From positions 372,001 to 436,000 of IMG/VR virus record IMGVR_UViG_3300034072_000926: 64,000 bases of DNA. The stretch is one strand, 5' to 3'. The stretch's first letter is position 1. Each line of letters begins with the position of its first letter. The notes under the pieces are model-generated. The model worked only from the letters and a program-made list of their open reading frames with translations, was not told the DNA's origin and did no database searches. The translations under genes and the position numbers were made by a program. This document shows, in pieces, positions 912 through 29,032 of the stretch.

Positions 912-1100
912 TCAATATTCGACATGGAGTTCGACACTCTGCAGACTTCCCTTGATGTCATAGATGACATCAGTGACAGTGAAATATCCCTCAGGGGTTC
1001 TGATGCGTTCGCCGACACGAGGAACATGACAGCTCTGATACTGCGCGATTTCCGTCCAGCAGCTATACCGTTCCCGGTAGACAGTGATTGTCAGTTCCAT
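912..1100 (-). CDS. hypothetical protein
   Basis: ATG after AGGAGATCGAAC; MELTITVYRE... Confidence 0.75.
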   Translation of the reverse strand: MELTITVYRERYSCWTEIAQYQSCHVPRVGERIRTPEGYFTVTDVIYDIKGSLQSVELHVEY

Positions 1101-1156
1101 GTTCGATCTCCTGTTTCTGTTGTCCACAGTTTAGCAGGATAGGTGAACAAGTCAAC
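1101..1156 (-). promoter_or_regulatory. repeated early promoter/RBS unit
   Basis: GTTGACTTGTTCACCTATCCTGCTAAACT...AACAGGAGATCGAAC. Confidence 0.85.
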
Positions 1157-1160
1157 CAAT

Positions 1161-1191
1161 AAAAAAGGGAAGTGTTTCCACTTCCCTTTTT
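1161..1191. terminator. intrinsic terminator (possibly bidirectional)
   Basis: AAAAAAGGGAAGTG-TTTC-CACTTCCCTTTTT perfect stem with A/T tails. Confidence 0.85.
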
Positions 1192-1368
1192 GATCTTTCA
1201 TCAGCTTCACGGCATTATCCCGTCTTCAGCACCCTTATCCGAGCCGTGTTAACTTCCTTGAGTATGCAATGATATCATAACAACGGAACACTCAAGGTTT
1301 GCAGCTGATGCTTCCTAGCCCATGATCTGCGGACTACAAAAGGAGCCGGGGGCACCGAATCTGTTTCT
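1161..1368 (-). ncRNA. candidate structured small RNA (~200 nt)
   Basis: own TTGACT-N16-TAAGTT promoter (to 1398) and terminator; no ORF; nested stems CATCAGCT/AGCTGATG, CCTTGAGT/ACTCAAGG, CACGGC/GCCGTG. Confidence 0.6.
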
Positions 1369-1402
1369 AGAACTTAACTCCTAACCATAAAGAGTCAAGC
1401 TA

Positions 1403-1846
1403 TTATTTTGCGGATTTCAACAATTCCTCAAGGGAGATACGCTCCACAAACCGTGCGCTAGGCATGTGGAAGAGAATCTGGGTTTCGCCCTTCTTCGTCT
1501 TCTTGCCGTTGACCTCGTAGATGCTCAGAGCCATCGAATCATTTGCACGATCGGCCAAGACCTTCAAGTCCTCGATGGACTGTCTTGGGAACCATTCAAA
1601 GACCTGGGCCATTGATTCAAAACCGAAATACCATTCCCGGCGATCCCGATGAACCCATTCGTATGTGGCCTTCTTGCCCTTACCCTTGCCTTCCCACCAG
1701 TCCTTGAGCAGCGGATCCAGTTCCGGACCAACGTGAACAGTAGGAGGAACATCTCCGCGCTCGATAGCCGCTTCGCTGATCTTGAACCCAAAGCCCCGGC
1801 TGTAAATGCCTTCGTCCTTGTTGTTCTCGAACCGGAAAATGAGCAT
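1403..1846 (-). CDS. hypothetical phage protein
   Basis: 147-aa ORF after cassette SD. Confidence 0.8.
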   Translation of the reverse strand: MLIFRFENNKDEGIYSRGFGFKISEAAIERGDVPPTVHVGPELDPLLKDWWEGKGKGKKATYEWVHRDRREWYFGFESMAQVFEWFPRQSIEDLKVLADRANDSMALSIYEVNGKKTKKGETQILFHMPSARFVERISLEELLKSAK

Positions 1847-1901
1847 TTCGATCTCCTCTTGCTTACCTGTTCATTTTAGCAGAATAGGTGAGCAAATCAA
1901 C
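1847..1901 (-). promoter_or_regulatory. repeated early promoter/RBS unit
   Basis: TTGATT..CTCACCTATTCTGCTAAAAT...AGGAGATCGAA. Confidence 0.8.
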
Positions 1902-2214
1902 CGATCTTTTTCAGTTTCAGAGCATTGATCTTGTCGGCCTCGATGCAGCCGACCCTGATCGAGAAGACGTCACTGTTCTCATATACCGCCAAGGTGAGCG
2001 AGGCATCACCGTTAACCCAAAGCTCAGTTTCTGAGGGTTGGAATACTTCCTTGAGAGAAAAGCCGAACGTGGCGAGGATATTTGCGCGATCCTCCCACTT
2101 TGCTTGATTTGACGAGTAGCAGATCTTGTCGCCGGTCATAGGAAGCGACCACGCATTCCGGCCTATGTTGCTGAGCCCGTCAAATGCTTTGCGAAGCTTG
2201 GTCATGTTGGACAT
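1897..2214 (-). CDS. hypothetical protein
   Basis: ORF after cassette SD. Confidence 0.75.
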   Translation of the reverse strand: MSNMTKLRKAFDGLSNIGRNAWSLPMTGDKICYSSNQAKWEDRANILATFGFSLKEVFQPSETELWVNGDASLTLAVYENSDVFSIRVGCIEADKINALKLKKIG

Positions 2215-2268
2215 ATCGATCTCCTCTGTTTACCAAATCGGTGTAGCAGATATGGTGATAACGTCAAC
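2215..2268 (-). promoter_or_regulatory. repeated early promoter/RBS unit
   Basis: TTGACG..TCACC..TGCTACAC...AGGAGATCGAT. Confidence 0.75.
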
Positions 2269-2508
2269 CTATTTTGCACCAAATGGTCGAGGGAAACCGA
2301 GAATCTGCTCGATAGCAATGTCGAGGTATTTGCTTGCTTCGCGCAAGCTCATGTTCATCTTTGACAGGTCAGTTTCCGACGGAAGATGAATCTCAGGAAG
2401 ACCTACCTTATACGCGAGAAGCCGCGCAGCATCTTCATCAAGACCTTGAAACGCCCCGGCATCCTTATGCAGCTGGATTATGGCATTGGCCGTCTCTTGA
2501 ATGTTCAT
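2269..2508 (-). CDS. hypothetical protein
   Basis: TAATG coupling with upstream ORF; MNIQETANA... Confidence 0.7.
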   Translation of the reverse strand: MNIQETANAIIQLHKDAGAFQGLDEDAARLLAYKVGLPEIHLPSETDLSKMNMSLREASKYLDIAIEQILGFPRPFGAK

Positions 2509-2669
2509 TACTTGGACACCTTGTTGCAATTGCCGAACGGAGCGCAGTAGGGTTCGCCGTCATCGCCGGTTGCGTAGACAATTCCTTCAACGACCTCATC
2601 GACGAAAGCGGCGACGATCACACCGGGCTGAATCTCCATCAATACTTCGTCACCGACATAGAGCTGCAT
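2508..2669 (-). CDS. small hypothetical protein (53 aa, below ORF-track cutoff)
   Basis: MQLYVGDEVLMEIQPG...KVSK* after cassette SD. Confidence 0.75.
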   Translation of the reverse strand: MQLYVGDEVLMEIQPGVIVAAFVDEVVEGIVYATGDDGEPYCAPFGNCNKVSK

Positions 2670-2728
2670 GTTCGATCTCCTTTTGCTGCCTACTCACCTG
2701 TTTTAGCACAAGTAAGTAGGCAGTCAAC
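2670..2728 (-). promoter_or_regulatory. repeated early promoter/RBS unit
   Basis: TTGACT...TGCTAAAACAGGTGAGTAGGCAGCAAAAGGAGATCGAAC. Confidence 0.85.
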
Positions 2729-2733
2729 CTCTT

Positions 2734-3546
2734 TTAGGCGTCCAGCTTCTTTGCTGCAATGCGCTGGGACAGCTTATTGTCGACCTTGACCATAACGTCC
2801 TTGTAGGGTGCCATGATCCGCACTTCCTTGCCCTCAAATGTGGTCACCGACACGCCACCCGAAGGGAAGTAGCGCGAGACTGTTCCGAACGCAATACCGG
2901 CGCCCGTCATGCACTGGCTGCTGTATTCCTTGTGCGTGAACATCACAGTATCGCCGACCTCGACCGTCTGACCGAGTTGGTCGACGAACTTCTTGACATT
3001 CGCCATCACTGCTTCGCGTTCGGCCGCTGCCTGACCCTTTGCCTTCTTCGTGAACTTCAGTTCGGTTGGACCATCATAGTCGAGCAGGACAGTAAGGGCA
3101 GCATATCCGCCCAGTTTCTTGCTAACATCGGTGCCATCGTCGAGGATGAACCGATATTCCGGATTCTGGTAGCTGCTGGCTTCCAATTGACCGCCAATGC
3201 ACTGGCAGTCAACAACCATTTTCTTGTACGAATCCCACATCTGGTAGTGATGAATTACAGGAGTGTCGCAGTCGACCTTCTTGTATTGATTAACAAAGCC
3301 GCCCTTCTGGTCATCTTCGTTTGTCATTTCGCTGAATTCGAGACGTTTGCGCTTGAATGCAGCGAGATTGAATCGGATGATCGAACCATTTCGCGCCCCT
3401 CCGTCGATCCGAATTGCGAAGGGCTTCTCACCAAGCTGGTAGGGCTCCAGCTTCTTGATCATCTCCATCTGTATTTCTTTCGAAGCAAGCAGATCAACCC
3501 AGCGCCCGTCGAAGAAAGTCCGCAGTTCAATTTCGGTGTAGGTCAT
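2734..3546 (-). CDS. hypothetical protein with C-terminal KOW/SH3-like barrel; paralog of 29756..30556
   Basis: FVDQLGQTVEVGDTV...FGTVSRY resembles FFDRLDQEVNIGDLV...VGVVKGY. Confidence 0.75.
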   Translation of the reverse strand: MTYTEIELRTFFDGRWVDLLASKEIQMEMIKKLEPYQLGEKPFAIRIDGGARNGSIIRFNLAAFKRKRLEFSEMTNEDDQKGGFVNQYKKVDCDTPVIHHYQMWDSYKKMVVDCQCIGGQLEASSYQNPEYRFILDDGTDVSKKLGGYAALTVLLDYDGPTELKFTKKAKGQAAAEREAVMANVKKFVDQLGQTVEVGDTVMFTHKEYSSQCMTGAGIAFGTVSRYFPSGGVSVTTFEGKEVRIMAPYKDVMVKVDNKLSQRIAAKKLDA

Positions 3547-3628
3547 GTTTCGATCTCCGTATTGTTTGCTTCTGTTGTCCTCAACTTAGCAGAAATAGGT
3601 GAAGCGTCAACCGCTTATTCACCTATTT
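3547..3628 (-). promoter_or_regulatory. repeated early promoter/RBS unit with dyad AATAGGTGAA/TTCACCTATT around -35
   Basis: boxes flank GTTGAC in inverted orientation. Confidence 0.85.
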
Positions 3629-4145
3629 TGTGAAAATCCTTGACCTCCCCTGCGCGACGTTCCGCTGCGGTCGTCCGTCGCCAGCCCAGTTCCTTCATCT
3701 TCGCAGTCTGTTCCTTGCCGCGCAAGTAGGCAAACTGGTTCCGCTCCTTGTCGAGTTCCCGCTGACGCTCTACGGCGTTCTTGTGCGCGAGGCTGTCTGC
3801 GTCGTGAGCCATATTCAGCGTGGCCGAGAAGCTGTTCTCATAGGCTACTGCGCCGTAGTGCCAGTTGGTCGAGAAGGTGTGGCCATCGGGGTGCATCAGC
3901 TTGTCGCCGTAGTTGACGTGACTGCCGTCCGGCGTAATGCGGTCATGTTTGTCGACGGGGCGGAAACCCAACGCGATAGCGCGGTCGTGCATACGATGCA
4001 GCATATTGGAACCGCCGTGCCCGCCGCGCTTATAGAATCTCGCAGAAGCCGGATAGACCATCTTGCCCTCATGGAAATGAGCTTCCTGGAAATCGACGTT
4101 CTGGCCGCTTCCGAGGATCTTCTTTGCGAGCTTCTGAAATTCCAT
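3615..4145 (-). CDS. hypothetical protein
   Basis: 176-aa ORF after cassette SD. Confidence 0.8.
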   Translation of the reverse strand: MEFQKLAKKILGSGQNVDFQEAHFHEGKMVYPASARFYKRGGHGGSNMLHRMHDRAIALGFRPVDKHDRITPDGSHVNYGDKLMHPDGHTFSTNWHYGAVAYENSFSATLNMAHDADSLAHKNAVERQRELDKERNQFAYLRGKEQTAKMKELGWRRTTAAERRAGEVKDFHKIGE

Positions 4146-25080: not shown

Positions 25081-26286
25081 TTAAAAGGAAAATGCACAAC
25101 CCAACTGCTCGAGGACTTCTTCGGCTTCATCGAAGTCCATGTCGAACTCGTCGACCAGAAGGAACAACGTGGGTTGCTTGCCCTGCAATTGTGCGCGGAT
25201 CTTGTCCAGCTTGGTCGTCGGAGCAGCTACCTTAGGGGCCGGGGCAACCAAGCTCTTACGGGCTTCTACGATGCGCTGGACAGCTTCATCGCTAACAAAG
25301 GCACCGTGGACGCGCCGCAGGTTGCTGCCCTCCATGAGCAGCATGTCACCCTTGCCTAGGAGGTTCTCTGCACCTTCTTCGCCGATAATCGTCCGGCTGT
25401 CGAAATTGCTTGCAACTCGGAAGCTAATCCGAGTGGGGAGGTTCGCCTTGAGAACACCCGTCACAACGTCCACAGACGGCCGCTGAGTAGCCATAATAAG
25501 ATGGATGCCCGCTGCTCGCGCTTTCTGTGCAATGCGCTGCACAAGCCCTTCAAGGGCTTTGCCGGCCATCGAGATCAGATCAGCAAATTCATCAATGACC
25601 ACAACAATGTAGGGCAGCTTGTTGGCGTGCTTTTCATTGTAGTTCGCAATGTTGCGAACCTTTGCATCGCTGAGCAGTCGGTAACGATCCTCCATGGTCT
25701 GGACAATCTCACCCAGTGCCTCAATGGCTTCCTTGGGATCGGTAATCGTCGGGCGCAGCAAATGCGGGATGCCATCATATATGGACAGTTCCAGCATCTT
25801 CGGATCGATAAAGAGGAACTTGCATTCCTCTGCCGAAAACTTGGAAAGCAGGCTGAGGATCATGCTGTTCACGCCCACGCTCTTGCCCGATCCGGTGGTG
25901 CCCGCGACGAGCAAGTGGGGCATGGTAGCGAGGTCGCTCACGACGGCCTCCCCAGTGATTGCACGACCGAGGATGATGGGCAATGCCGCGTTGCTCTTCT
26001 GGAACTCCGGGGCAACCAAGAGGTCATCGAAGGAGATCATCTGGCGGTTCTCATTGGGAACCTCGACCGACATTGTGTTGCTTCCCTGCGTGGGAAGGAT
26101 ACGAATGCCCTGCACGCCAATGCAGCGCGCAATATCGTTGGTCAGACCGATGACCTTATTGGAACGGACACCGCGCTCCAATTCGATTTCGTAGGTGGAA
26201 ACCAGCGGGCCGCTCTTGACCGAAACGACTTCGACTTTGAAGCCGAAATCTTCGAAAGCTTGTTCCAGTGCAACGGTGCGGTTCAT
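25081..26286 (-). CDS. ftsK: FtsK/SpoIIIE DNA translocase motor domain only
   Basis: PHLLVAGTTGSGKS, IDPKMLEL, VVVIDEFADL, RAAGIHLIMATQRPSVDV, GAENLLGKGDML; no N-terminal TM. Confidence 0.9.
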   Translation of the reverse strand: MNRTVALEQAFEDFGFKVEVVSVKSGPLVSTYEIELERGVRSNKVIGLTNDIARCIGVQGIRILPTQGSNTMSVEVPNENRQMISFDDLLVAPEFQKSNAALPIILGRAITGEAVVSDLATMPHLLVAGTTGSGKSVGVNSMILSLLSKFSAEECKFLFIDPKMLELSIYDGIPHLLRPTITDPKEAIEALGEIVQTMEDRYRLLSDAKVRNIANYNEKHANKLPYIVVVIDEFADLISMAGKALEGLVQRIAQKARAAGIHLIMATQRPSVDVVTGVLKANLPTRISFRVASNFDSRTIIGEEGAENLLGKGDMLLMEGSNLRRVHGAFVSDEAVQRIVEARKSLVAPAPKVAAPTTKLDKIRAQLQGKQPTLFLLVDEFDMDFDEAEEVLEQLGCAFSF

Positions 26287-26340
26287 CTTCGATCTCCTGT
26301 TTGTTGTCCTCGTTTTAGCAGGAAACAGGTGAACGTCAAC
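26287..26340 (-). promoter_or_regulatory. repeated early promoter/RBS unit
   Basis: TTGACGTTCACCTGTTTCCTGCTAAAAC...AACAGGAGATCGAAG. Confidence 0.85.
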
Positions 26341-26343
26341 CGA

Positions 26344-26493
26344 TTATTTGTTGGGATTCTCGATCACGCAGATCTTGTCGCCGTTCATCACGCAACCAAT
26401 CTCTTTGAATTCCTGGGAGACCGCATTGCCGACAAAGGACACGATAGTCATGATTGCCAGCGCGATGCCGACCCACATAAGACCCTTTTCCAT
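26344..26493 (-). CDS. Flp/Fap pilin-like peptide (49 aa, not in ORF track)
   Basis: MEKGLMWVGIALAIMTIVSFVGNAVSQEFKEIG; AAGGAGG SD; TTGACA promoter. Confidence 0.65.
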   Translation of the reverse strand: MEKGLMWVGIALAIMTIVSFVGNAVSQEFKEIGCVMNGDKICVIENPNK

Positions 26494-26549
26494 CGTGTCC
26501 TCCTTTCCTTGACTCTTGCGAGCTTAACACAGGAACGACACTTGTCAAG

Positions 26550-26906
26550 TCAGTCCTCGGATGCATCTCCAAAATACTGATCCTCGATGCTCTGGTTAGC
26601 ATCTTTGCAGTAGAGACGCCGGGCTTTAGCCATCTGTTCCCACGCGGGCCAGGTCAGACTAAGCTCAAGGAAATCGCCTAGTCCGTCTTTATCCGTTGTG
26701 CTTCGAGTCATAATGTGATGCTCGTCACACTCGATGACCTTCATGTCGTGATTAGGACCAGAGAAGCCGGCCTCACGCCATAGCTGACCAACAGCTGGCT
26801 CAACCTCAGGTGCCCGATGCCATTGCCACAAGCGGATCGGTACGCGCCAGAACTTCCATGCCATCCCGGCTCCGGCTACAATTGCACCTGTGGAAATCAG
26901 AGGCAT
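26550..26906 (-). CDS. hypothetical protein
   Basis: coupled ORF. Confidence 0.65.
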   Translation of the reverse strand: MPLISTGAIVAGAGMAWKFWRVPIRLWQWHRAPEVEPAVGQLWREAGFSGPNHDMKVIECDEHHIMTRSTTDKDGLGDFLELSLTWPAWEQMAKARRLYCKDANQSIEDQYFGDASED

Positions 26907-27070
26907 TAGTCGATGATGTCACAGCCGTGGATCAGACCGACAATAATCAGTGCGACCAACGTCGGCATTGCGACCCAGAGCCATGCAAAGTCCGGAATGA
27001 CTGCGAACTTGAGGATCATGAGGACGAACGAAATGAACAGTCCAGCAACAAAGATAAAGAGTTCACCCAT
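26906..27070 (-). CDS. small two-TM membrane protein (54 aa)
   Basis: MILKFAVIPDFAWLWVAMP; TAATG coupling at both ends. Confidence 0.7.
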   Translation of the reverse strand: MGELFIFVAGLFISFVLMILKFAVIPDFAWLWVAMPTLVALIIVGLIHGCDIID

Positions 27071-27855
27071 TAGTTAACCTTTTCGAATACGATATCTGTG
27101 CGGATGATGATCTTCTCGCTGTTCCAAGGCTTTTCAACAGCCTTGACATACGGAGCGCCATCATGGAGTAGTCGATGATCGAACAGCAAGGCTGATCCGG
27201 CCATCGGCTTGTTAGAGAACAGGACTTCATCATCGTTGCCGACGCGGTCCCAATCACTGAAATCCATGTCGGACATTGCGAATCCGGCCTGTGGATCTTT
27301 GAGGAAACGAGTAGCACCACTTTCGTTGCTCGTCAAGTAAATCACAAGACTCATCAGCGTTCGCTGGGTTTCCGTCTTCGCATAGGTGCCATCGTAATGG
27401 GCGACCAAGAGGCTTTCGTCCTCATAGCGAATGAAGCGCATCAACGGGTTAACGCCGATGGGACGCCATAGTTCGTGACCATCATGGTCAGTCGGCGTGA
27501 ACGGATTGCAGACTCGAACCTCCGGCAACAGTGGCTTTATCCGGCGCCACAGAACATCTGCGAGTCCCTCGTTGTAGTTGGACAGCCGATAGTTGCCGAT
27601 TTTGTCGTAGAGCTTGTTTGCGTAGCCGTCCGTGCCAACGGCCTGCCAAGCATTCTGTCGCAGACCTTGGAGCAGGACGCTGATGATGCCGGCTGGAATG
27701 AGATTGTCGATGGTGATTGCCTCGTGACCATCGCCGATGTCATGTGTCTCGTGCCTCCAGATCGGAGCGCAGAGATAGTTGCCGCCGAAATGACTACCCG
27801 AAATGATCTTGTTCGAATAGTCTGAATATTCGAAGGAGTTGACGAAGCCGCTCAT
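27070..27855 (-). CDS. 2OG-Fe(II) oxygenase (prolyl-hydroxylase-like)
   Basis: RFIRY..AHYDG, LVIYL, GATRF, LLFDHRLLHDG, KIIIRTD. Confidence 0.85.
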   Translation of the reverse strand: MSGFVNSFEYSDYSNKIISGSHFGGNYLCAPIWRHETHDIGDGHEAITIDNLIPAGIISVLLQGLRQNAWQAVGTDGYANKLYDKIGNYRLSNYNEGLADVLWRRIKPLLPEVRVCNPFTPTDHDGHELWRPIGVNPLMRFIRYEDESLLVAHYDGTYAKTETQRTLMSLVIYLTSNESGATRFLKDPQAGFAMSDMDFSDWDRVGNDDEVLFSNKPMAGSALLFDHRLLHDGAPYVKAVEKPWNSEKIIIRTDIVFEKVN

Positions 27856-28028
27856 CGGTCGCTCAGTTTCCCGATCGGACTCGTCATACCACAGAGGCGG
27901 AGCCATCCTGCATGATTGCGTCGACGTTCTGCATCCTGGGCTTCCAGCTGCTCGCGCTTTTTCTCTGCCCAGTAGCGATCGTTCTCCGTGAGGTCCAGCC
28001 CACGCCGGCCGTCATTGTGGTAGGTCAT
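27852..28028 (-). CDS. small hypothetical protein
   Basis: ATGA overlaps at both ends. Confidence 0.55.
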   Translation of the reverse strand: MTYHNDGRRGLDLTENDRYWAEKKREQLEAQDAERRRNHAGWLRLCGMTSPIGKLSDR

Positions 28029-29032
28029 TCTGCGGGCCTCCATGCTGGATTGTCCCAACCATCTTTAACACCACTTTGGAGAATGTCAAGATGGACTGCG
28101 GGCGACCGGCCCAGATATTTGTGGGCATTGTAGCGGTGCATCCGCTCCAGATTGTCGCGATATTCGTCATATTGCGCACGATCCTCAGCGGTGCCATAAT
28201 CGGAGACCATGCCGTCCACAAATGCAGCGCACAGGTCGCTCCACTTGGTATGCGTGAAGATCTCCACGAAATCGTAGGGCGCACCGAAGACGACCTCATC
28301 CGTGGTCGCGTCGAACATGTCGCCTGTTGGTGCGCGAGTGAGAACCTCTTCCGGAACCCCGAGGAAACGACCGACCTCGTAGACTTCCGATTTGAACAGG
28401 TCGCTGATCAGCTGGAGATCGACCATGCCGTCAGAAGCTTTGCCGAAATAGCCGAGGTAGCCACCCTCGCTGAGATTGGTCGTGCCGATGACCAGACCGG
28501 GCATTCCCTGTGCTGCGAGAACGCTGGTCACATAATAGTAGACTGGAGTCCGAGCGTAGCTGGTGATCTGACCACGACACCAGTCCGCTTTGTCCTCATT
28601 GGGTGCACCGAGACCGCTGAACAGTTCCACGTCCTGTATGATCTGCTTTGTGATCAGACTCATGTTGATTTCGTAGAACTTAACACCGAACGTCCGGCAG
28701 ACCTGCTCCGCGAGATTAGCTGCGTCGTCCTGTCCCGTTACGCCGTGATTCTCACGATCTGGCAGGGTGATGGCAACAATACGTTCGATCGGACTGTCCT
28801 CTGCCCGGCTGGCCATTTCGACCAGACCCAGGACCACCGCACTGTCGATGCCACCGGAGATCGCAACCACTGCGCTCTTGAGGCCGGCTTGTCGGTAATA
28901 GGCGTTGAGCAGCTTGATCTTTTCCTCGACCACCGTCTCAACATTGAACCCACGTTCCTGTCGGACATGAGCGAGAGCCTGTCGGAGCGGCGCACTGAGG
29001 ACCATGTTGGTCGAGTGGTTGCGGATTTCCAT
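28025..29032 (-). CDS. nadE: NH3-dependent NAD+ synthetase
   Basis: AISGGIDSAV, GTTNLSE, GYFGKASDG, LISDLFKSEV; no glutaminase domain. Confidence 0.88.
   Translation of the reverse strand: MEIRNHSTNMVLSAPLRQALAHVRQERGFNVETVVEEKIKLLNAYYRQAGLKSAVVAISGGIDSAVVLGLVEMASRAEDSPIERIVAITLPDRENHGVTGQDDAANLAEQVCRTFGVKFYEINMSLITKQIIQDVELFSGLGAPNEDKADWCRGQITSYARTPVYYYVTSVLAAQGMPGLVIGTTNLSEGGYLGYFGKASDGMVDLQLISDLFKSEVYEVGRFLGVPEEVLTRAPTGDMFDATTDEVVFGAPYDFVEIFTHTKWSDLCAAFVDGMVSDYGTAEDRAQYDEYRDNLERMHRYNAHKYLGRSPAVHLDILQSGVKDGWDNPAWRPAE

What the first reader, a model, noticed from the sequence alone, without database searches (positions are those of the whole stretch)
26344..26549. Unannotated 49-aa Flp-pilin mimic lacking the prepilin leader
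Seen: MEKGLMWVGIALAIMTIVSFVGNAVSQEFKEIG follows the mature Flp pattern (xEYGLxxxxIAxxIxxxxxxxGxxxxxxFxxI), with Y-to-K in the Flp motif, no G|A cleavage leader and a C-terminal Cys pair. It has a strong SD and its own promoter. Established: several alphaproteobacterial phages adsorb via Tad/Cpa pili. Inference: a dominant-negative pilin that blocks pilus assembly (superinfection exclusion).
Basis: partly seen in the sequence, partly recalled or inferred. Interest (0 to 1): 0.62.

Follow-up and report, generated by a model that had tools for sequence, protein, structure and literature searches.

The report
Leaderless Flp-pilin look-alike in huge phage
A 465-kb phage related to giant Sinorhizobium and Agrobacterium phages carries a real 49-residue membrane-protein gene that copies the core helix of bacterial Flp (Tad) pilins but has no leader peptide, so it probably tampers with the host's pili, though this has not been tested.

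Summary
Window 26344-26493 (minus strand) is a real 49-aa gene with a GGAGG ribosome-binding site. It has its own copy of a promoter motif that occurs 36 times in the genome against about 1 expected.

The protein alone hits nothing: not Pfam, not PDB, and only itself among 1.84 billion proteins. A diverged homologue in a sister phage opened a family of 13 distinct 49-65-aa proteins. All contigs long enough to judge belong to one clade of 465-481-kb phages, and the family is under purifying selection (dN/dS 0.11-0.33).

At family level the Flp resemblance is statistically solid:
- hhalign against 35 Flp prepilins gives 95% probability, P about 1e-8.
- 9 of 13 members hit Pfam Flp_Fap, the best at 25 bits, below the 32.2-bit cut-off.
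- A reciprocal HMM search returns only Flp prepilins.
- No shuffle out of 1000-4000 reaches the observed score.

The proteins start at mature-pilin position +3/+4. They keep Glu5 and Gly/Ala7-Leu8 and replace Tyr6 by an invariant Lys. They lack the leader and Thr2, and add an invariant Cys-x7-Cys tail.

The capsid protein is 88.5% identical to that of Sinorhizobium phage Phosso, and Sinorhizobium makes Flp pili. The phage has no Tad machinery of its own.

Interference with host Tad pili is a plausible inference with a type IVa precedent (phage FimU and PilA mimics). It is untested.

The parts
26344..26493 (-). CDS of the 49-aa leaderless Flp-like membrane protein (P0001). Residues 1-33 align to positions +4 to +36 of mature Flp. 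The tail carries C34-x7-C42 and an (I/V)I-x-(D/N)-P-N motif.
   Evidence: ORF. The identical gene is called on 8 public contigs. Family of 13 with invariant E2 K3 S19 G22 S26 C34 C42 P47. dN/dS 0.11-0.33 among P0002-P0005. hhalign to Flp 95%. AF2 predicts a helix over residues 3-36.
26499..26503 (-). Shine-Dalgarno GGAGG, 5 nt upstream of the ATG
   Evidence: Read from the sequence. The six members whose upstream DNA was read all have GGAGG or GAGGAG 5-8 nt before the ATG.
26521..26548 (-). Promoter-like element: TTGACA (26543-26548), 16-nt spacer ending in TGT, TAAGCT (26521-26526)
   Evidence: Sequence. The motif class occurs 36 times in the genome against about 1 expected; 32 of 36 are followed by a ribosome-binding site and start codon. 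The same element precedes the family gene in five other phages.
26550..26906 (-). Upstream neighbour: 118-aa protein with a hydrophobic N-terminus and no family match. It is conserved in relatives and marks one edge of the variable slot that holds the gene.
   Evidence: Homologues at 79% identity (L082) and in L081.
25081..26286 (-). Downstream neighbour: 401-aa FtsK/SpoIIIE-type motor protein with its own TTGACG promoter-like element (26334-26339). It marks the other edge of the slot and is not linked to the family in other phages.
   Evidence: Pfam FtsK_SpoIIIE 207 bits. The 81%-identical homologue in L081 is preceded by an unrelated 78-aa ORF instead of the Flp-like gene.

Best explanation
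The gene encodes a small inner-membrane protein that is derived from, or has converged on, the single hydrophobic helix of Flp (type IVc / Tad) pilins. It is translated directly in a 'pre-processed' form: it has no class III leader, so it would not need the host prepilin peptidase.

It sits in a cluster of small genes, each with its own sigma-70-like promoter, so it is probably made early in infection. I propose that it inserts N-in/C-out like a pilin and enters the host Tad/Cpa assembly pathway through the conserved Glu5-(Gly/Ala)7-Leu8 helix. There it stalls or caps assembly as a poison subunit, for three reasons:
- it lacks residues +1 to +2/+3, including Thr2;
- it has Lys in place of Tyr6, the residue that keeps helical register in the Tad filament;
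- it carries a foreign disulfide-looped C-terminal tail.

The infected cell would then lose functional Tad pili. That would exclude pilus-dependent competitor phages and stop sibling virions from adsorbing in vain.

Shown here: the gene is real and selected, the Flp-like profile similarity, the missing leader, the invariant Lys and Cys pair, the promoter class, the Rhizobiaceae-phage kinship, and the absence of phage-encoded Tad machinery. Inferred: early timing, topology, the disulfide, entry into the Tad pathway, the poisoning step, and the exclusion benefit.
For: Gene reality:
- Ribosome-binding site and promoter.
- 13 distinct homologues with dN/dS 0.11-0.33.
- Contigs from an RNA library tile 26190-26607 without mismatch, which is weak support.

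Flp likeness:
- P0001 scores 12.9 bits against an HMM of mature Flp; 0 of 4000 shuffles reach it, and it is the top of 5806 genome ORFs.
- Other members score 12-27 bits, with 0 of 1000 shuffles each.
- Pfam Flp_Fap is the best family for 9 of 13 members, best E 1.7e-5, with protein residues 1-33 matching profile positions 10-42 of 46.
- hhalign gives 95.6% and 95.4%, P 1.2e-8 and 1.7e-8.
- In the reciprocal HMM search, 34 of the 35 best non-self hits among 9,724 ORF segments carry the Flp cleavage motif.
- The nearest hit outside the family in the 5.8-billion-protein word search is a genuine Flp prepilin.

Context:
- No T2SSE/CpaF, T2SSF/TadBC or A24 peptidase in the phage genome, so any pilus role must act on the host system.
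- Capsid 88.5% identical to Sinorhizobium phage Phosso and 71.8% to Agrobacterium phage Atu_ph07.
- S. meliloti has two flp clusters that make pili (PMC10934763).
- In the C. crescentus Tad filament, Thr2 and Tyr6 make the inter-subunit register contacts (PMC10710030).
- Precedent: phage FimU and PilA mimics, including N-terminal-only PilA fragments in virulent phages (PMC12952977).
Against: - P0001 itself has no Pfam hit, no BLASTP alignment to S. meliloti PilA2, and no relative other than itself in 1.84 billion representatives.
- No family member reaches Pfam's curated cut-off.
- The similarity lies in a hydrophobic helix, where profile statistics can be optimistic.
- The most conserved part of the family is the Cys-x7-Cys...DPN tail, which Flp pilins lack. 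The tail, not the helix, may be the functional part.
- Without a positively charged leader the orientation is uncertain. The C-terminal flank has more Lys/Arg than the N-terminal flank, which could favour the opposite topology.
- No receptor is known for this phage clade.
- The closest isolates (Phosso, Atu_ph07) and a 462-kb relative lack the gene, so it is dispensable.
- The exact host is unknown.
Confidence: 0.4

Rival explanations
1. Receptor masking rather than poisoning. The protein is incorporated into otherwise functional Tad pili. Its Cys-loop tail changes the filament surface, so pilus-binding phages can no longer attach. This would be analogous to prophage P-FimU replacing FimU.
For: The Flp likeness is the same as above. 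In Tad pili the C-terminal part of the pilin is surface exposed and is where phage phiCb5 binds (abstract of PMC11067988, listed). P-FimU works by incorporation without loss of pilus function (PMC12952977). The tail is the most conserved part of the family.
Against: Residues +1 to +2/+3 are missing and Tyr6 is replaced by Lys. These remove contacts described as holding the Tad filament in register (PMC10710030), so efficient co-polymerisation seems unlikely. A strongly conserved tail is also the opposite of the high diversity seen in P-FimU proteins under phage-versus-phage selection.
Confidence: 0.15
2. The Flp-like helix is only a membrane anchor, either inherited from a captured flp gene or convergent. 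The conserved periplasmic Cys-x7-Cys...DPN peptide is the effector and acts on a target unrelated to pili, for example a sensor kinase, an envelope enzyme or a transporter. This would resemble small regulators such as MgrB, or other early host-takeover peptides.
For: Conservation is highest in the tail: E33 (nearly invariant), C34, C42, I44, P47 and N48. The language-model atlas places the protein nearest to unnamed small proteins and, weakly, to MgrB and DUF2556 (scores 0.75-0.77, which is chance level). The gene sits among dozens of unrelated small early genes.
Against: An arbitrary anchor would not need invariant Glu and Lys at the very N-terminus. It would not keep Gly/Ala-Leu, G22 and S26 in register with Flp, and it would not retrieve only Flp prepilins in a reciprocal search. 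The atlas scores are below the level that shuffled sequences reach a third of the time.
Confidence: 0.27
3. Chance resemblance: an ordinary small single-pass phage membrane protein of unknown role, whose helix looks like Flp only because both are Ala/Leu/Ile/Val/Gly-rich.
For: P0001 alone has no significant hit anywhere. All Pfam scores are below the curated cut-off.
Against: No shuffle out of 1000-4000, with composition and block structure kept, reaches the observed scores for any of five members. The protein is a clear outlier among 5806 ORFs of the same genome. Flp_Fap is the only Pfam family recurring across members, out of 24,736. Reciprocal hits are almost exclusively Flp. hhalign P is about 1e-8.
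Confidence: 0.13
4. Not a gene: a spurious ORF in an intergenic spacer.
For: It is very short, and its DNA is identical in all six near-identical contigs, so those copies show no informative variation.
Against: There are 13 diverged homologues with dN/dS well below 1. The start context, ribosome-binding site and promoter are conserved across the phages examined, and the Cys pair is invariant.
Confidence: 0.01

Closest known systems
Flp/Fap type IVc (Tad) major pilins (Pfam PF04964), e.g. S. meliloti PilA1/PilA2, A. tumefaciens CtpA, C. crescentus PilA
   Same: Similar size (about 40-45 aa mature against 49-65 aa). A single long hydrophobic helix, with Glu at the position of Glu5, Gly/Ala-Leu at +7/+8, a conserved Gly near the helix end and a Ser/Thr-rich segment after it. 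Profile-profile match over 34 columns.
   Different: No class III leader and no Gly at -1. Residues +1 to +2/+3, including Thr2, are absent. Tyr6 is replaced by an invariant Lys. A C-terminal Cys-x7-Cys...DPN tail is added. The gene is encoded by a lytic-type huge phage with no tad/cpa genes nearby or anywhere in the genome. Scores are below Pfam's cut-off.
Phage-encoded type IVa pilin mimics: prophage P-FimU, Xylella prophage P-PilA, and truncated PilA-like proteins (N-terminal about 60 residues) of virulent Pseudomonas phages (PMC12952977)
   Same: A phage carries a copy of a host pilus subunit. For P-FimU the demonstrated benefit is blocking adsorption of pilus-dependent phages. The truncated PilA proteins likewise keep only the N-terminal helix and occur in virulent phages.
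   Different: Those mimic type IVa pilins (FimU and PilA); none is Flp/Tad-like. That paper does not describe a leaderless form. The mimic here targets a different pilus class and a different host group (Rhizobiaceae-type), and it has no experimental support.
Phage inhibitors of pilus motors: Tip (D3112) and Aqs1 (DMS3), which bind PilB (PMC11436027, PMC13060843)
   Same: The proposed outcome is the same: loss of pili on the infected cell and superinfection exclusion.
   Different: Those are soluble cytoplasmic proteins that bind the extension ATPase. This is a membrane protein resembling the pilin itself.
MgrB-type small membrane regulators (an N-terminal transmembrane helix plus a short periplasmic tail with two conserved Cys)
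   Same: Overall architecture and size. It was the nearest named cluster in the language-model atlas.
   Different: The atlas score of 0.75 is at chance level. There is no sequence or profile match, and the N-terminal motif is Flp-like rather than MgrB-like.

Membership tests
Flp/Fap pilin (Pfam PF04964, type IVc pilin) | Match to the Flp_Fap HMM above the curated gathering score (32.2 bits) | tested here: not met
   P0001 has no hit at E<=10. The best homologue, P0005, scores 25.0 bits at E 1.7e-5. Nine of 13 members hit at E<=1, and none reaches the cut-off.
Flp/Fap pilin (Pfam PF04964, type IVc pilin) | Profile-level similarity of the hydrophobic helix to mature Flp | tested here: met
   hhalign gives 94.4-95.6% probability, P 1e-8 to 9e-8. 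No shuffle reaches the observed HMM scores. The reciprocal HMM search returns Flp prepilins almost exclusively.
Flp/Fap pilin (Pfam PF04964, type IVc pilin) | Class III signal peptide ending in Gly, cleaved by TadV/CpaA (G/XXXXEY motif) | tested here: not met
   An in-frame TAA lies 10 codons upstream with no alternative start, and the ribosome-binding site occupies the place of a leader. The same start context holds in the six members whose upstream DNA was read. Pfam aligns the proteins from profile position 10.
Flp/Fap pilin (Pfam PF04964, type IVc pilin) | Glu5 and Tyr6 of the Flp motif; Thr2 | tested here: not met
   Glu is present and invariant. Tyr6 is replaced by an invariant Lys in 13 of 13 members, whereas Tyr is invariant in the 35 Flp sequences. 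Thr2 has no counterpart because the protein starts at +3/+4.
Flp/Fap pilin (Pfam PF04964, type IVc pilin) | Encoded with tad/cpa assembly genes (prepilin peptidase, CpaF/TadA ATPase, TadB/C platform) | tested here: not met
   The phage genome has no PF01478 and no PF00482, and only P-loop-level noise for PF00437. Neighbours are unrelated small phage genes.
Flp/Fap pilin (Pfam PF04964, type IVc pilin) | Polymerises into a Tad pilus | not testable with these tools
   Needs pilus purification or labelling in a host.
Phage-encoded pilin mimics (P-FimU / P-PilA type) | A phage-encoded protein with detectable similarity to a pilin of the host lineage | tested here: met
   All contigs long enough to judge belong to one huge-phage clade. 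The clade's isolates infect Sinorhizobium and Agrobacterium. Flp similarity includes S. meliloti PilA2 in the profile.
Phage-encoded pilin mimics (P-FimU / P-PilA type) | Interacts with or is incorporated into the pilus and blocks adsorption of pilus-dependent phages | not testable with these tools
MgrB-like small membrane regulators | Sequence or profile match to PF13998 | tested here: not met
   There is no Pfam hit. The atlas feature score of 0.75 is at chance level.

The most novel reading that the evidence does not exclude
A clade of 465-481-kb phages of Rhizobiaceae-type hosts has evolved a leaderless pilin decoy for the Tad/Flp (type IVc) pilus. It is a ready-processed subunit that bypasses the prepilin peptidase and shuts down or re-surfaces the host's Tad pili early in infection. 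If so, it would be the first phage-encoded inhibitor or mimic specific to Tad pili. It would also be a natural 50-residue tool for blocking Tad pilus assembly, and it would imply that Tad pili are a contested phage receptor in rhizobia.
Probability: 0.4. Interest if true: 0.75.

Novelty: new variant of a known kind. Interest (0 to 1): 0.62.

Why it matters
Tad/Flp pili drive attachment, surface sensing and host colonisation in many bacteria, including plant symbionts. They are phage receptors in Caulobacter.

Known phage countermeasures against pili all concern type IVa pili. They either bind the PilB motor (Tip, Aqs1) or replace a minor or major pilin (P-FimU, P-PilA). In the literature searched here I found no phage-encoded protein aimed at the Tad system.

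A leaderless Flp mimic would extend pilin mimicry to a second pilus class. It would show a new trick, skipping prepilin processing. It would also give a very small genetic probe for how Tad platforms select and polymerise subunits, in particular the roles of Thr2, Glu5 and Tyr6.

It further suggests that the plastic early region of these giant rhizobiophages, with dozens of promoter-equipped mini-genes, is a store of host-surface and takeover effectors.

Tried and rejected
Searches with P0001 alone that found nothing:
- Pfam, PHROGs and NCBIfam, and PDB sequences.
- The word-indexed search of 5.8 billion proteins, which returned only itself.
- The exhaustive HMMER search of 1.84 billion representatives, which returned only itself.
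- tblastn against 50,697 phage records, for both P0001 and P0005.
- Pattern scans of IMG/VR with the single protein.
- BLASTP against S. meliloti PilA2.
- A search for paralogues in the phage genome.

Other dead ends:
- The six near-identical contigs gave no informative variation in the ORF.
- megablast of the region against phage records gave no match.
- The genome search cannot draw 'relatives' for a virus record.
- The NAD synthase neighbour gave no host clue. Its relatives are contigs from Myxococcota, Bdellovibrionota and CPR metagenome-assembled genomes at 38-48% identity.
- The atlas suggestion of MgrB or DUF2556 was rejected as chance level.
- A functional link to the FtsK-like neighbour was rejected, because the other family members sit in different slots and a close relative has an unrelated 78-aa ORF in this slot.
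- A hidden leader from an upstream start was rejected. P0001 has an in-frame stop. In other members the longer open frames overlap the promoter, the ribosome-binding site and the preceding gene.

Limited or not run:
- The AF2 model shows a single helix over residues 3-36 (mean pLDDT 68) with an unstructured tail. I did not run a fold search because a lone helix matches anything.
- The RNA-library contigs show presence only. They give no strand, level or proof of transcription.

Full report
**What is there.** The window is G000:C1:372001-436000 of a single 465,259-bp contig with 49% GC and 58 tRNA genes. The contig has a T4 gp23-type major capsid gene. Its product is 88.5% identical to the capsid protein of Sinorhizobium phage Phosso (469 kb, host S. 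meliloti) and 71.8% identical to that of Agrobacterium phage Atu_ph07. It also resembles the published Sinorhizobium jumbo phage AP-J-162 (471.5 kb, 47% GC, with a tRNA carrying a CUA anticodon; PMC11242549). So the window comes from a huge T4-core myovirus whose cultured relatives infect Rhizobiaceae. Its own host is not known.

**The ORF and its signals.** The ORF lies at 26344-26493 on the minus strand: 49 aa, ATG start, TAA stop.
- A GGAGG ribosome-binding site sits 5 nt before the ATG.
- Further upstream lie TTGACA, a 16-nt spacer ending in TGT, and TAAGCT.
- The generic promoter scan missed this element. The motif TTGAC-N14-TGnTAnnnT nevertheless occurs 36 times in the genome, against about 1 expected.
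- 32 of the 36 copies are followed within 90 nt by a ribosome-binding site and a start codon. 18 lie on the minus strand of window 1155-29277, one of them at 26548.

The gene therefore belongs to a dense array of small genes that each have their own promoter. By analogy with T4 this looks like an early or host-takeover region; that is an inference. An in-frame TAA 10 codons upstream, with no start codon in between, rules out any leader peptide.

**Is it a gene?** Public gene callers call the identical ORF on 8 contigs from different samples. Those copies are identical in DNA and so carry no information on selection.

The window protein alone finds nothing in Pfam, PHROGs, NCBIfam or PDB. It finds only itself in the 5.8-billion-protein word search and in the exhaustive 1.84-billion-protein HMMER search.

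The way in came through neighbouring genes.
- A 462-kb relative, whose FtsK-like protein is 81% identical, has an unrelated 78-aa ORF in the same slot.
- A second relative from the same metagenome carries a 53-aa homologue elsewhere in its genome (34% identity by the genome search, 35% by MAFFT).
- Searching with the two-sequence alignment, then with a six-sequence one, gave 13 distinct members of 49-65 aa.
- Every contig long enough to judge is a phage of the same clade, 465-481 kb.
- Among P0002-P0005, dN/dS is 0.11-0.33 at dS of about 0.8-1.7.
- In the six members whose upstream DNA was read, all keep the same promoter element and ribosome-binding site.

It is a real, selected protein family. 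Phosso, Atu_ph07 and the 462-kb relative lack it, so it is an accessory gene. The P0002-type members occupy a slot that corresponds to window positions of about 7800 down to 384. The window's copy therefore sits in a different slot of the same plastic region.

**Is it Flp-like?** I collected 53 Flp prepilins from 151 Pseudomonadota genomes using PF04964, and added S. meliloti pSymA PilA2.

| Test | Result |
|---|---|
| P0001 against an HMM of mature Flp | 12.9 bits; 0 of 4000 composition- or block-preserving shuffles reach it (maximum 10.8) |
| Same HMM against all 5806 ORFs of the phage genome | P0001 ranks first; the next ORF scores 7.3 bits |
| Other family members against the same HMM | 12.4-27.1 bits; 0 of 1000 shuffles each |
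| Pfam Flp_Fap | best family for 9 of 13 members; best 25.0 bits, E 1.7e-5; protein 1-33 on profile positions 10-42 of 46; none reaches the 32.2-bit cut-off; P0001 itself does not hit |
| hhalign, family against 35 Flp prepilins | 95.4-95.6% probability, P 1.2-1.7e-8 over 34 columns |
| Reciprocal HMM (family's first 34 columns) against 9,724 ORF segments | after self, 34 of the 35 best hits carry the Flp cleavage motif, at 17-28 bits |
| Word search outside the family | the only other candidate is a genuine Flp prepilin (27 bits) |
| JGI annotation | one member is named 'Flp pilus assembly pilin Flp' |

I conclude that the resemblance is real at family level, through either homology or strong convergence. 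The proteins still fail the formal membership criteria.

**Anatomy relative to Flp.** In the profile alignment the initiator Met lies at mature-pilin position +3 or +4.
- The invariant Glu aligns with Glu5.
- The invariant Lys aligns with Tyr6, which is invariant in the 35 Flp sequences.
- Gly/Ala-Leu align with +7/+8.
- The invariant G22 and S26 align with the conserved Gly and the Ser/Thr-rich stretch of Flp.
- After column 34 comes a family-specific tail: nearly invariant Glu, invariant Cys, seven residues, invariant Cys, then a (I/V)I-x-(D/N)-P-N motif. Flp pilins have no such tail.

AF2 predicts one helix over residues 3-36 and a low-confidence tail. In the C. crescentus Tad filament, Thr2 hydrogen-bonds the neighbouring subunit's N-terminus. 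Tyr6 keeps the helical register, while Glu5 points outward (PMC10710030). The phage proteins thus keep the docking helix but lack two of the register contacts.

**Context for function.** The phage genome has no prepilin peptidase and no TadB/C-type platform. For the CpaF/TadA ATPase family it shows only P-loop-level noise. A pilus-related role would therefore have to act on the host's system. S. meliloti has two flp clusters that make type IVc pili (PMC10934763). Phage-encoded pilin mimics are established for type IVa pili: prophage FimU copies are incorporated and block tip-binding phages. N-terminal-only PilA fragments also occur in virulent Pseudomonas phages, where they are proposed either to incorporate or to block assembly (PMC12952977). 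I found no report of a phage Flp-like protein.

**Best explanation and rivals.**

| Explanation | Confidence |
|---|---|
| An early, leaderless Flp decoy that enters the host Tad pathway without peptidase processing and poisons assembly, giving superinfection exclusion | about 0.4 |
| Incorporation and receptor masking | about 0.15 |
| Helix as a mere anchor for a Cys-loop effector acting on another target | about 0.27 |
| Chance resemblance | about 0.13 |
| Not a gene | about 0.01 |

The main weaknesses of the best explanation:
- The helix is hydrophobic, so profile statistics may flatter the match.
- The tail is conserved more strongly than the helix.
- Topology without a leader is uncertain, because the C-terminal flank carries more Lys/Arg.
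- No receptor is known for this clade.
- The host is inferred from capsid kinship only.

**Occurrence.** The phage appears in subsurface or soil, indoor and wastewater data sets. In one wastewater metatranscriptome library, three contigs tile 26190-26607 without mismatch. This shows presence in an RNA library, not transcription.

**Verdict.** The dominant-negative and exclusion mechanism is a reasonable, precedented and testable hypothesis with no direct evidence. Novelty: a new variant of a known kind, namely phage pilin mimicry extended to Flp/Tad pilins in a leaderless form.

Noticed in passing
window 1155-29277, minus strand (18 sites, e.g. 26548, 24697, 24247, 23107, 21812): A conserved promoter-like motif, TTGAC-N14-TGnTAnnnT. 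It occurs 36 times in the 465-kb genome against about 1 expected. 32 copies are followed by a ribosome-binding site and start codon, and 22 of the 32 minus-strand copies lie in genome 350-400 kb. Nearly every small gene here has its own copy, and the motif is also conserved in sister phages (L081, L083, L084, L104-L106). It probably marks a temporal (early) promoter class.
   Followed up: partly
L081:2704-2940 (+), IMGVR_UViG_3300049044_000033: In a 462-kb relative whose FtsK-like protein is 81% identical, the slot between the 118/121-aa gene and the FtsK-like gene holds an unrelated 78-aa non-membrane ORF with the same promoter type. This shows cassette-like gene replacement between conserved neighbours.
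   Followed up: partly
window 25081-26286 (-): A phage-encoded FtsK/SpoIIIE motor of 401 aa, with the alpha and motor domains only and no N-terminal membrane domain. It is about 50% identical to bacterial FtsK motors. Its role in a huge phage is unknown.
   Followed up: no
window 27070-29032 (-): A 2OG-Fe(II) oxygenase-like gene (278 aa) and an NAD synthase gene (335 aa). The closest NadE relatives in species genomes are contigs from Myxococcota, Bdellovibrionota and CPR metagenome-assembled genomes at 38-48% identity, not Rhizobiaceae. Some of those short contigs may be misbinned phage.
   Followed up: partly
window 26550-27070 (-): Two further small predicted membrane proteins lie directly upstream, with overlapping stop and start codons: a 54-aa protein with two hydrophobic stretches and a 118-aa protein with a hydrophobic N-terminus. 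Neither has a family match, and both are conserved in relatives. Together with the Flp-like gene this makes three membrane proteins in a row.
   Followed up: no
G000:C1:222209-222282 and 441571-441647 (outside the window): Two tRNA genes with a CUA anticodon (amber-suppressor type, labelled Pyl by ARAGORN) among the 58 tRNAs. The related phage AP-J-162 is reported to have one as well. I did not check whether TAG is read through in some genes. The gene studied here ends in TAA.
   Followed up: no
G000:C1:278788-278985 and 317885-317980 (outside the window): Extra short matches to the Gp23 capsid family away from the main capsid gene (160622-161590). They may be capsid-related paralogues or fragments.
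   Followed up: no
JGI sample 3300034072: contigs Ga0310127_000020 (465 kb, the window) and Ga0310127_000018 (468 kb, L108): Two related huge phages co-occur in one sample. Each carries one diverged copy of the Flp-like gene (33-35% identity between the copies) in a different slot of the same early region.
   Followed up: partly
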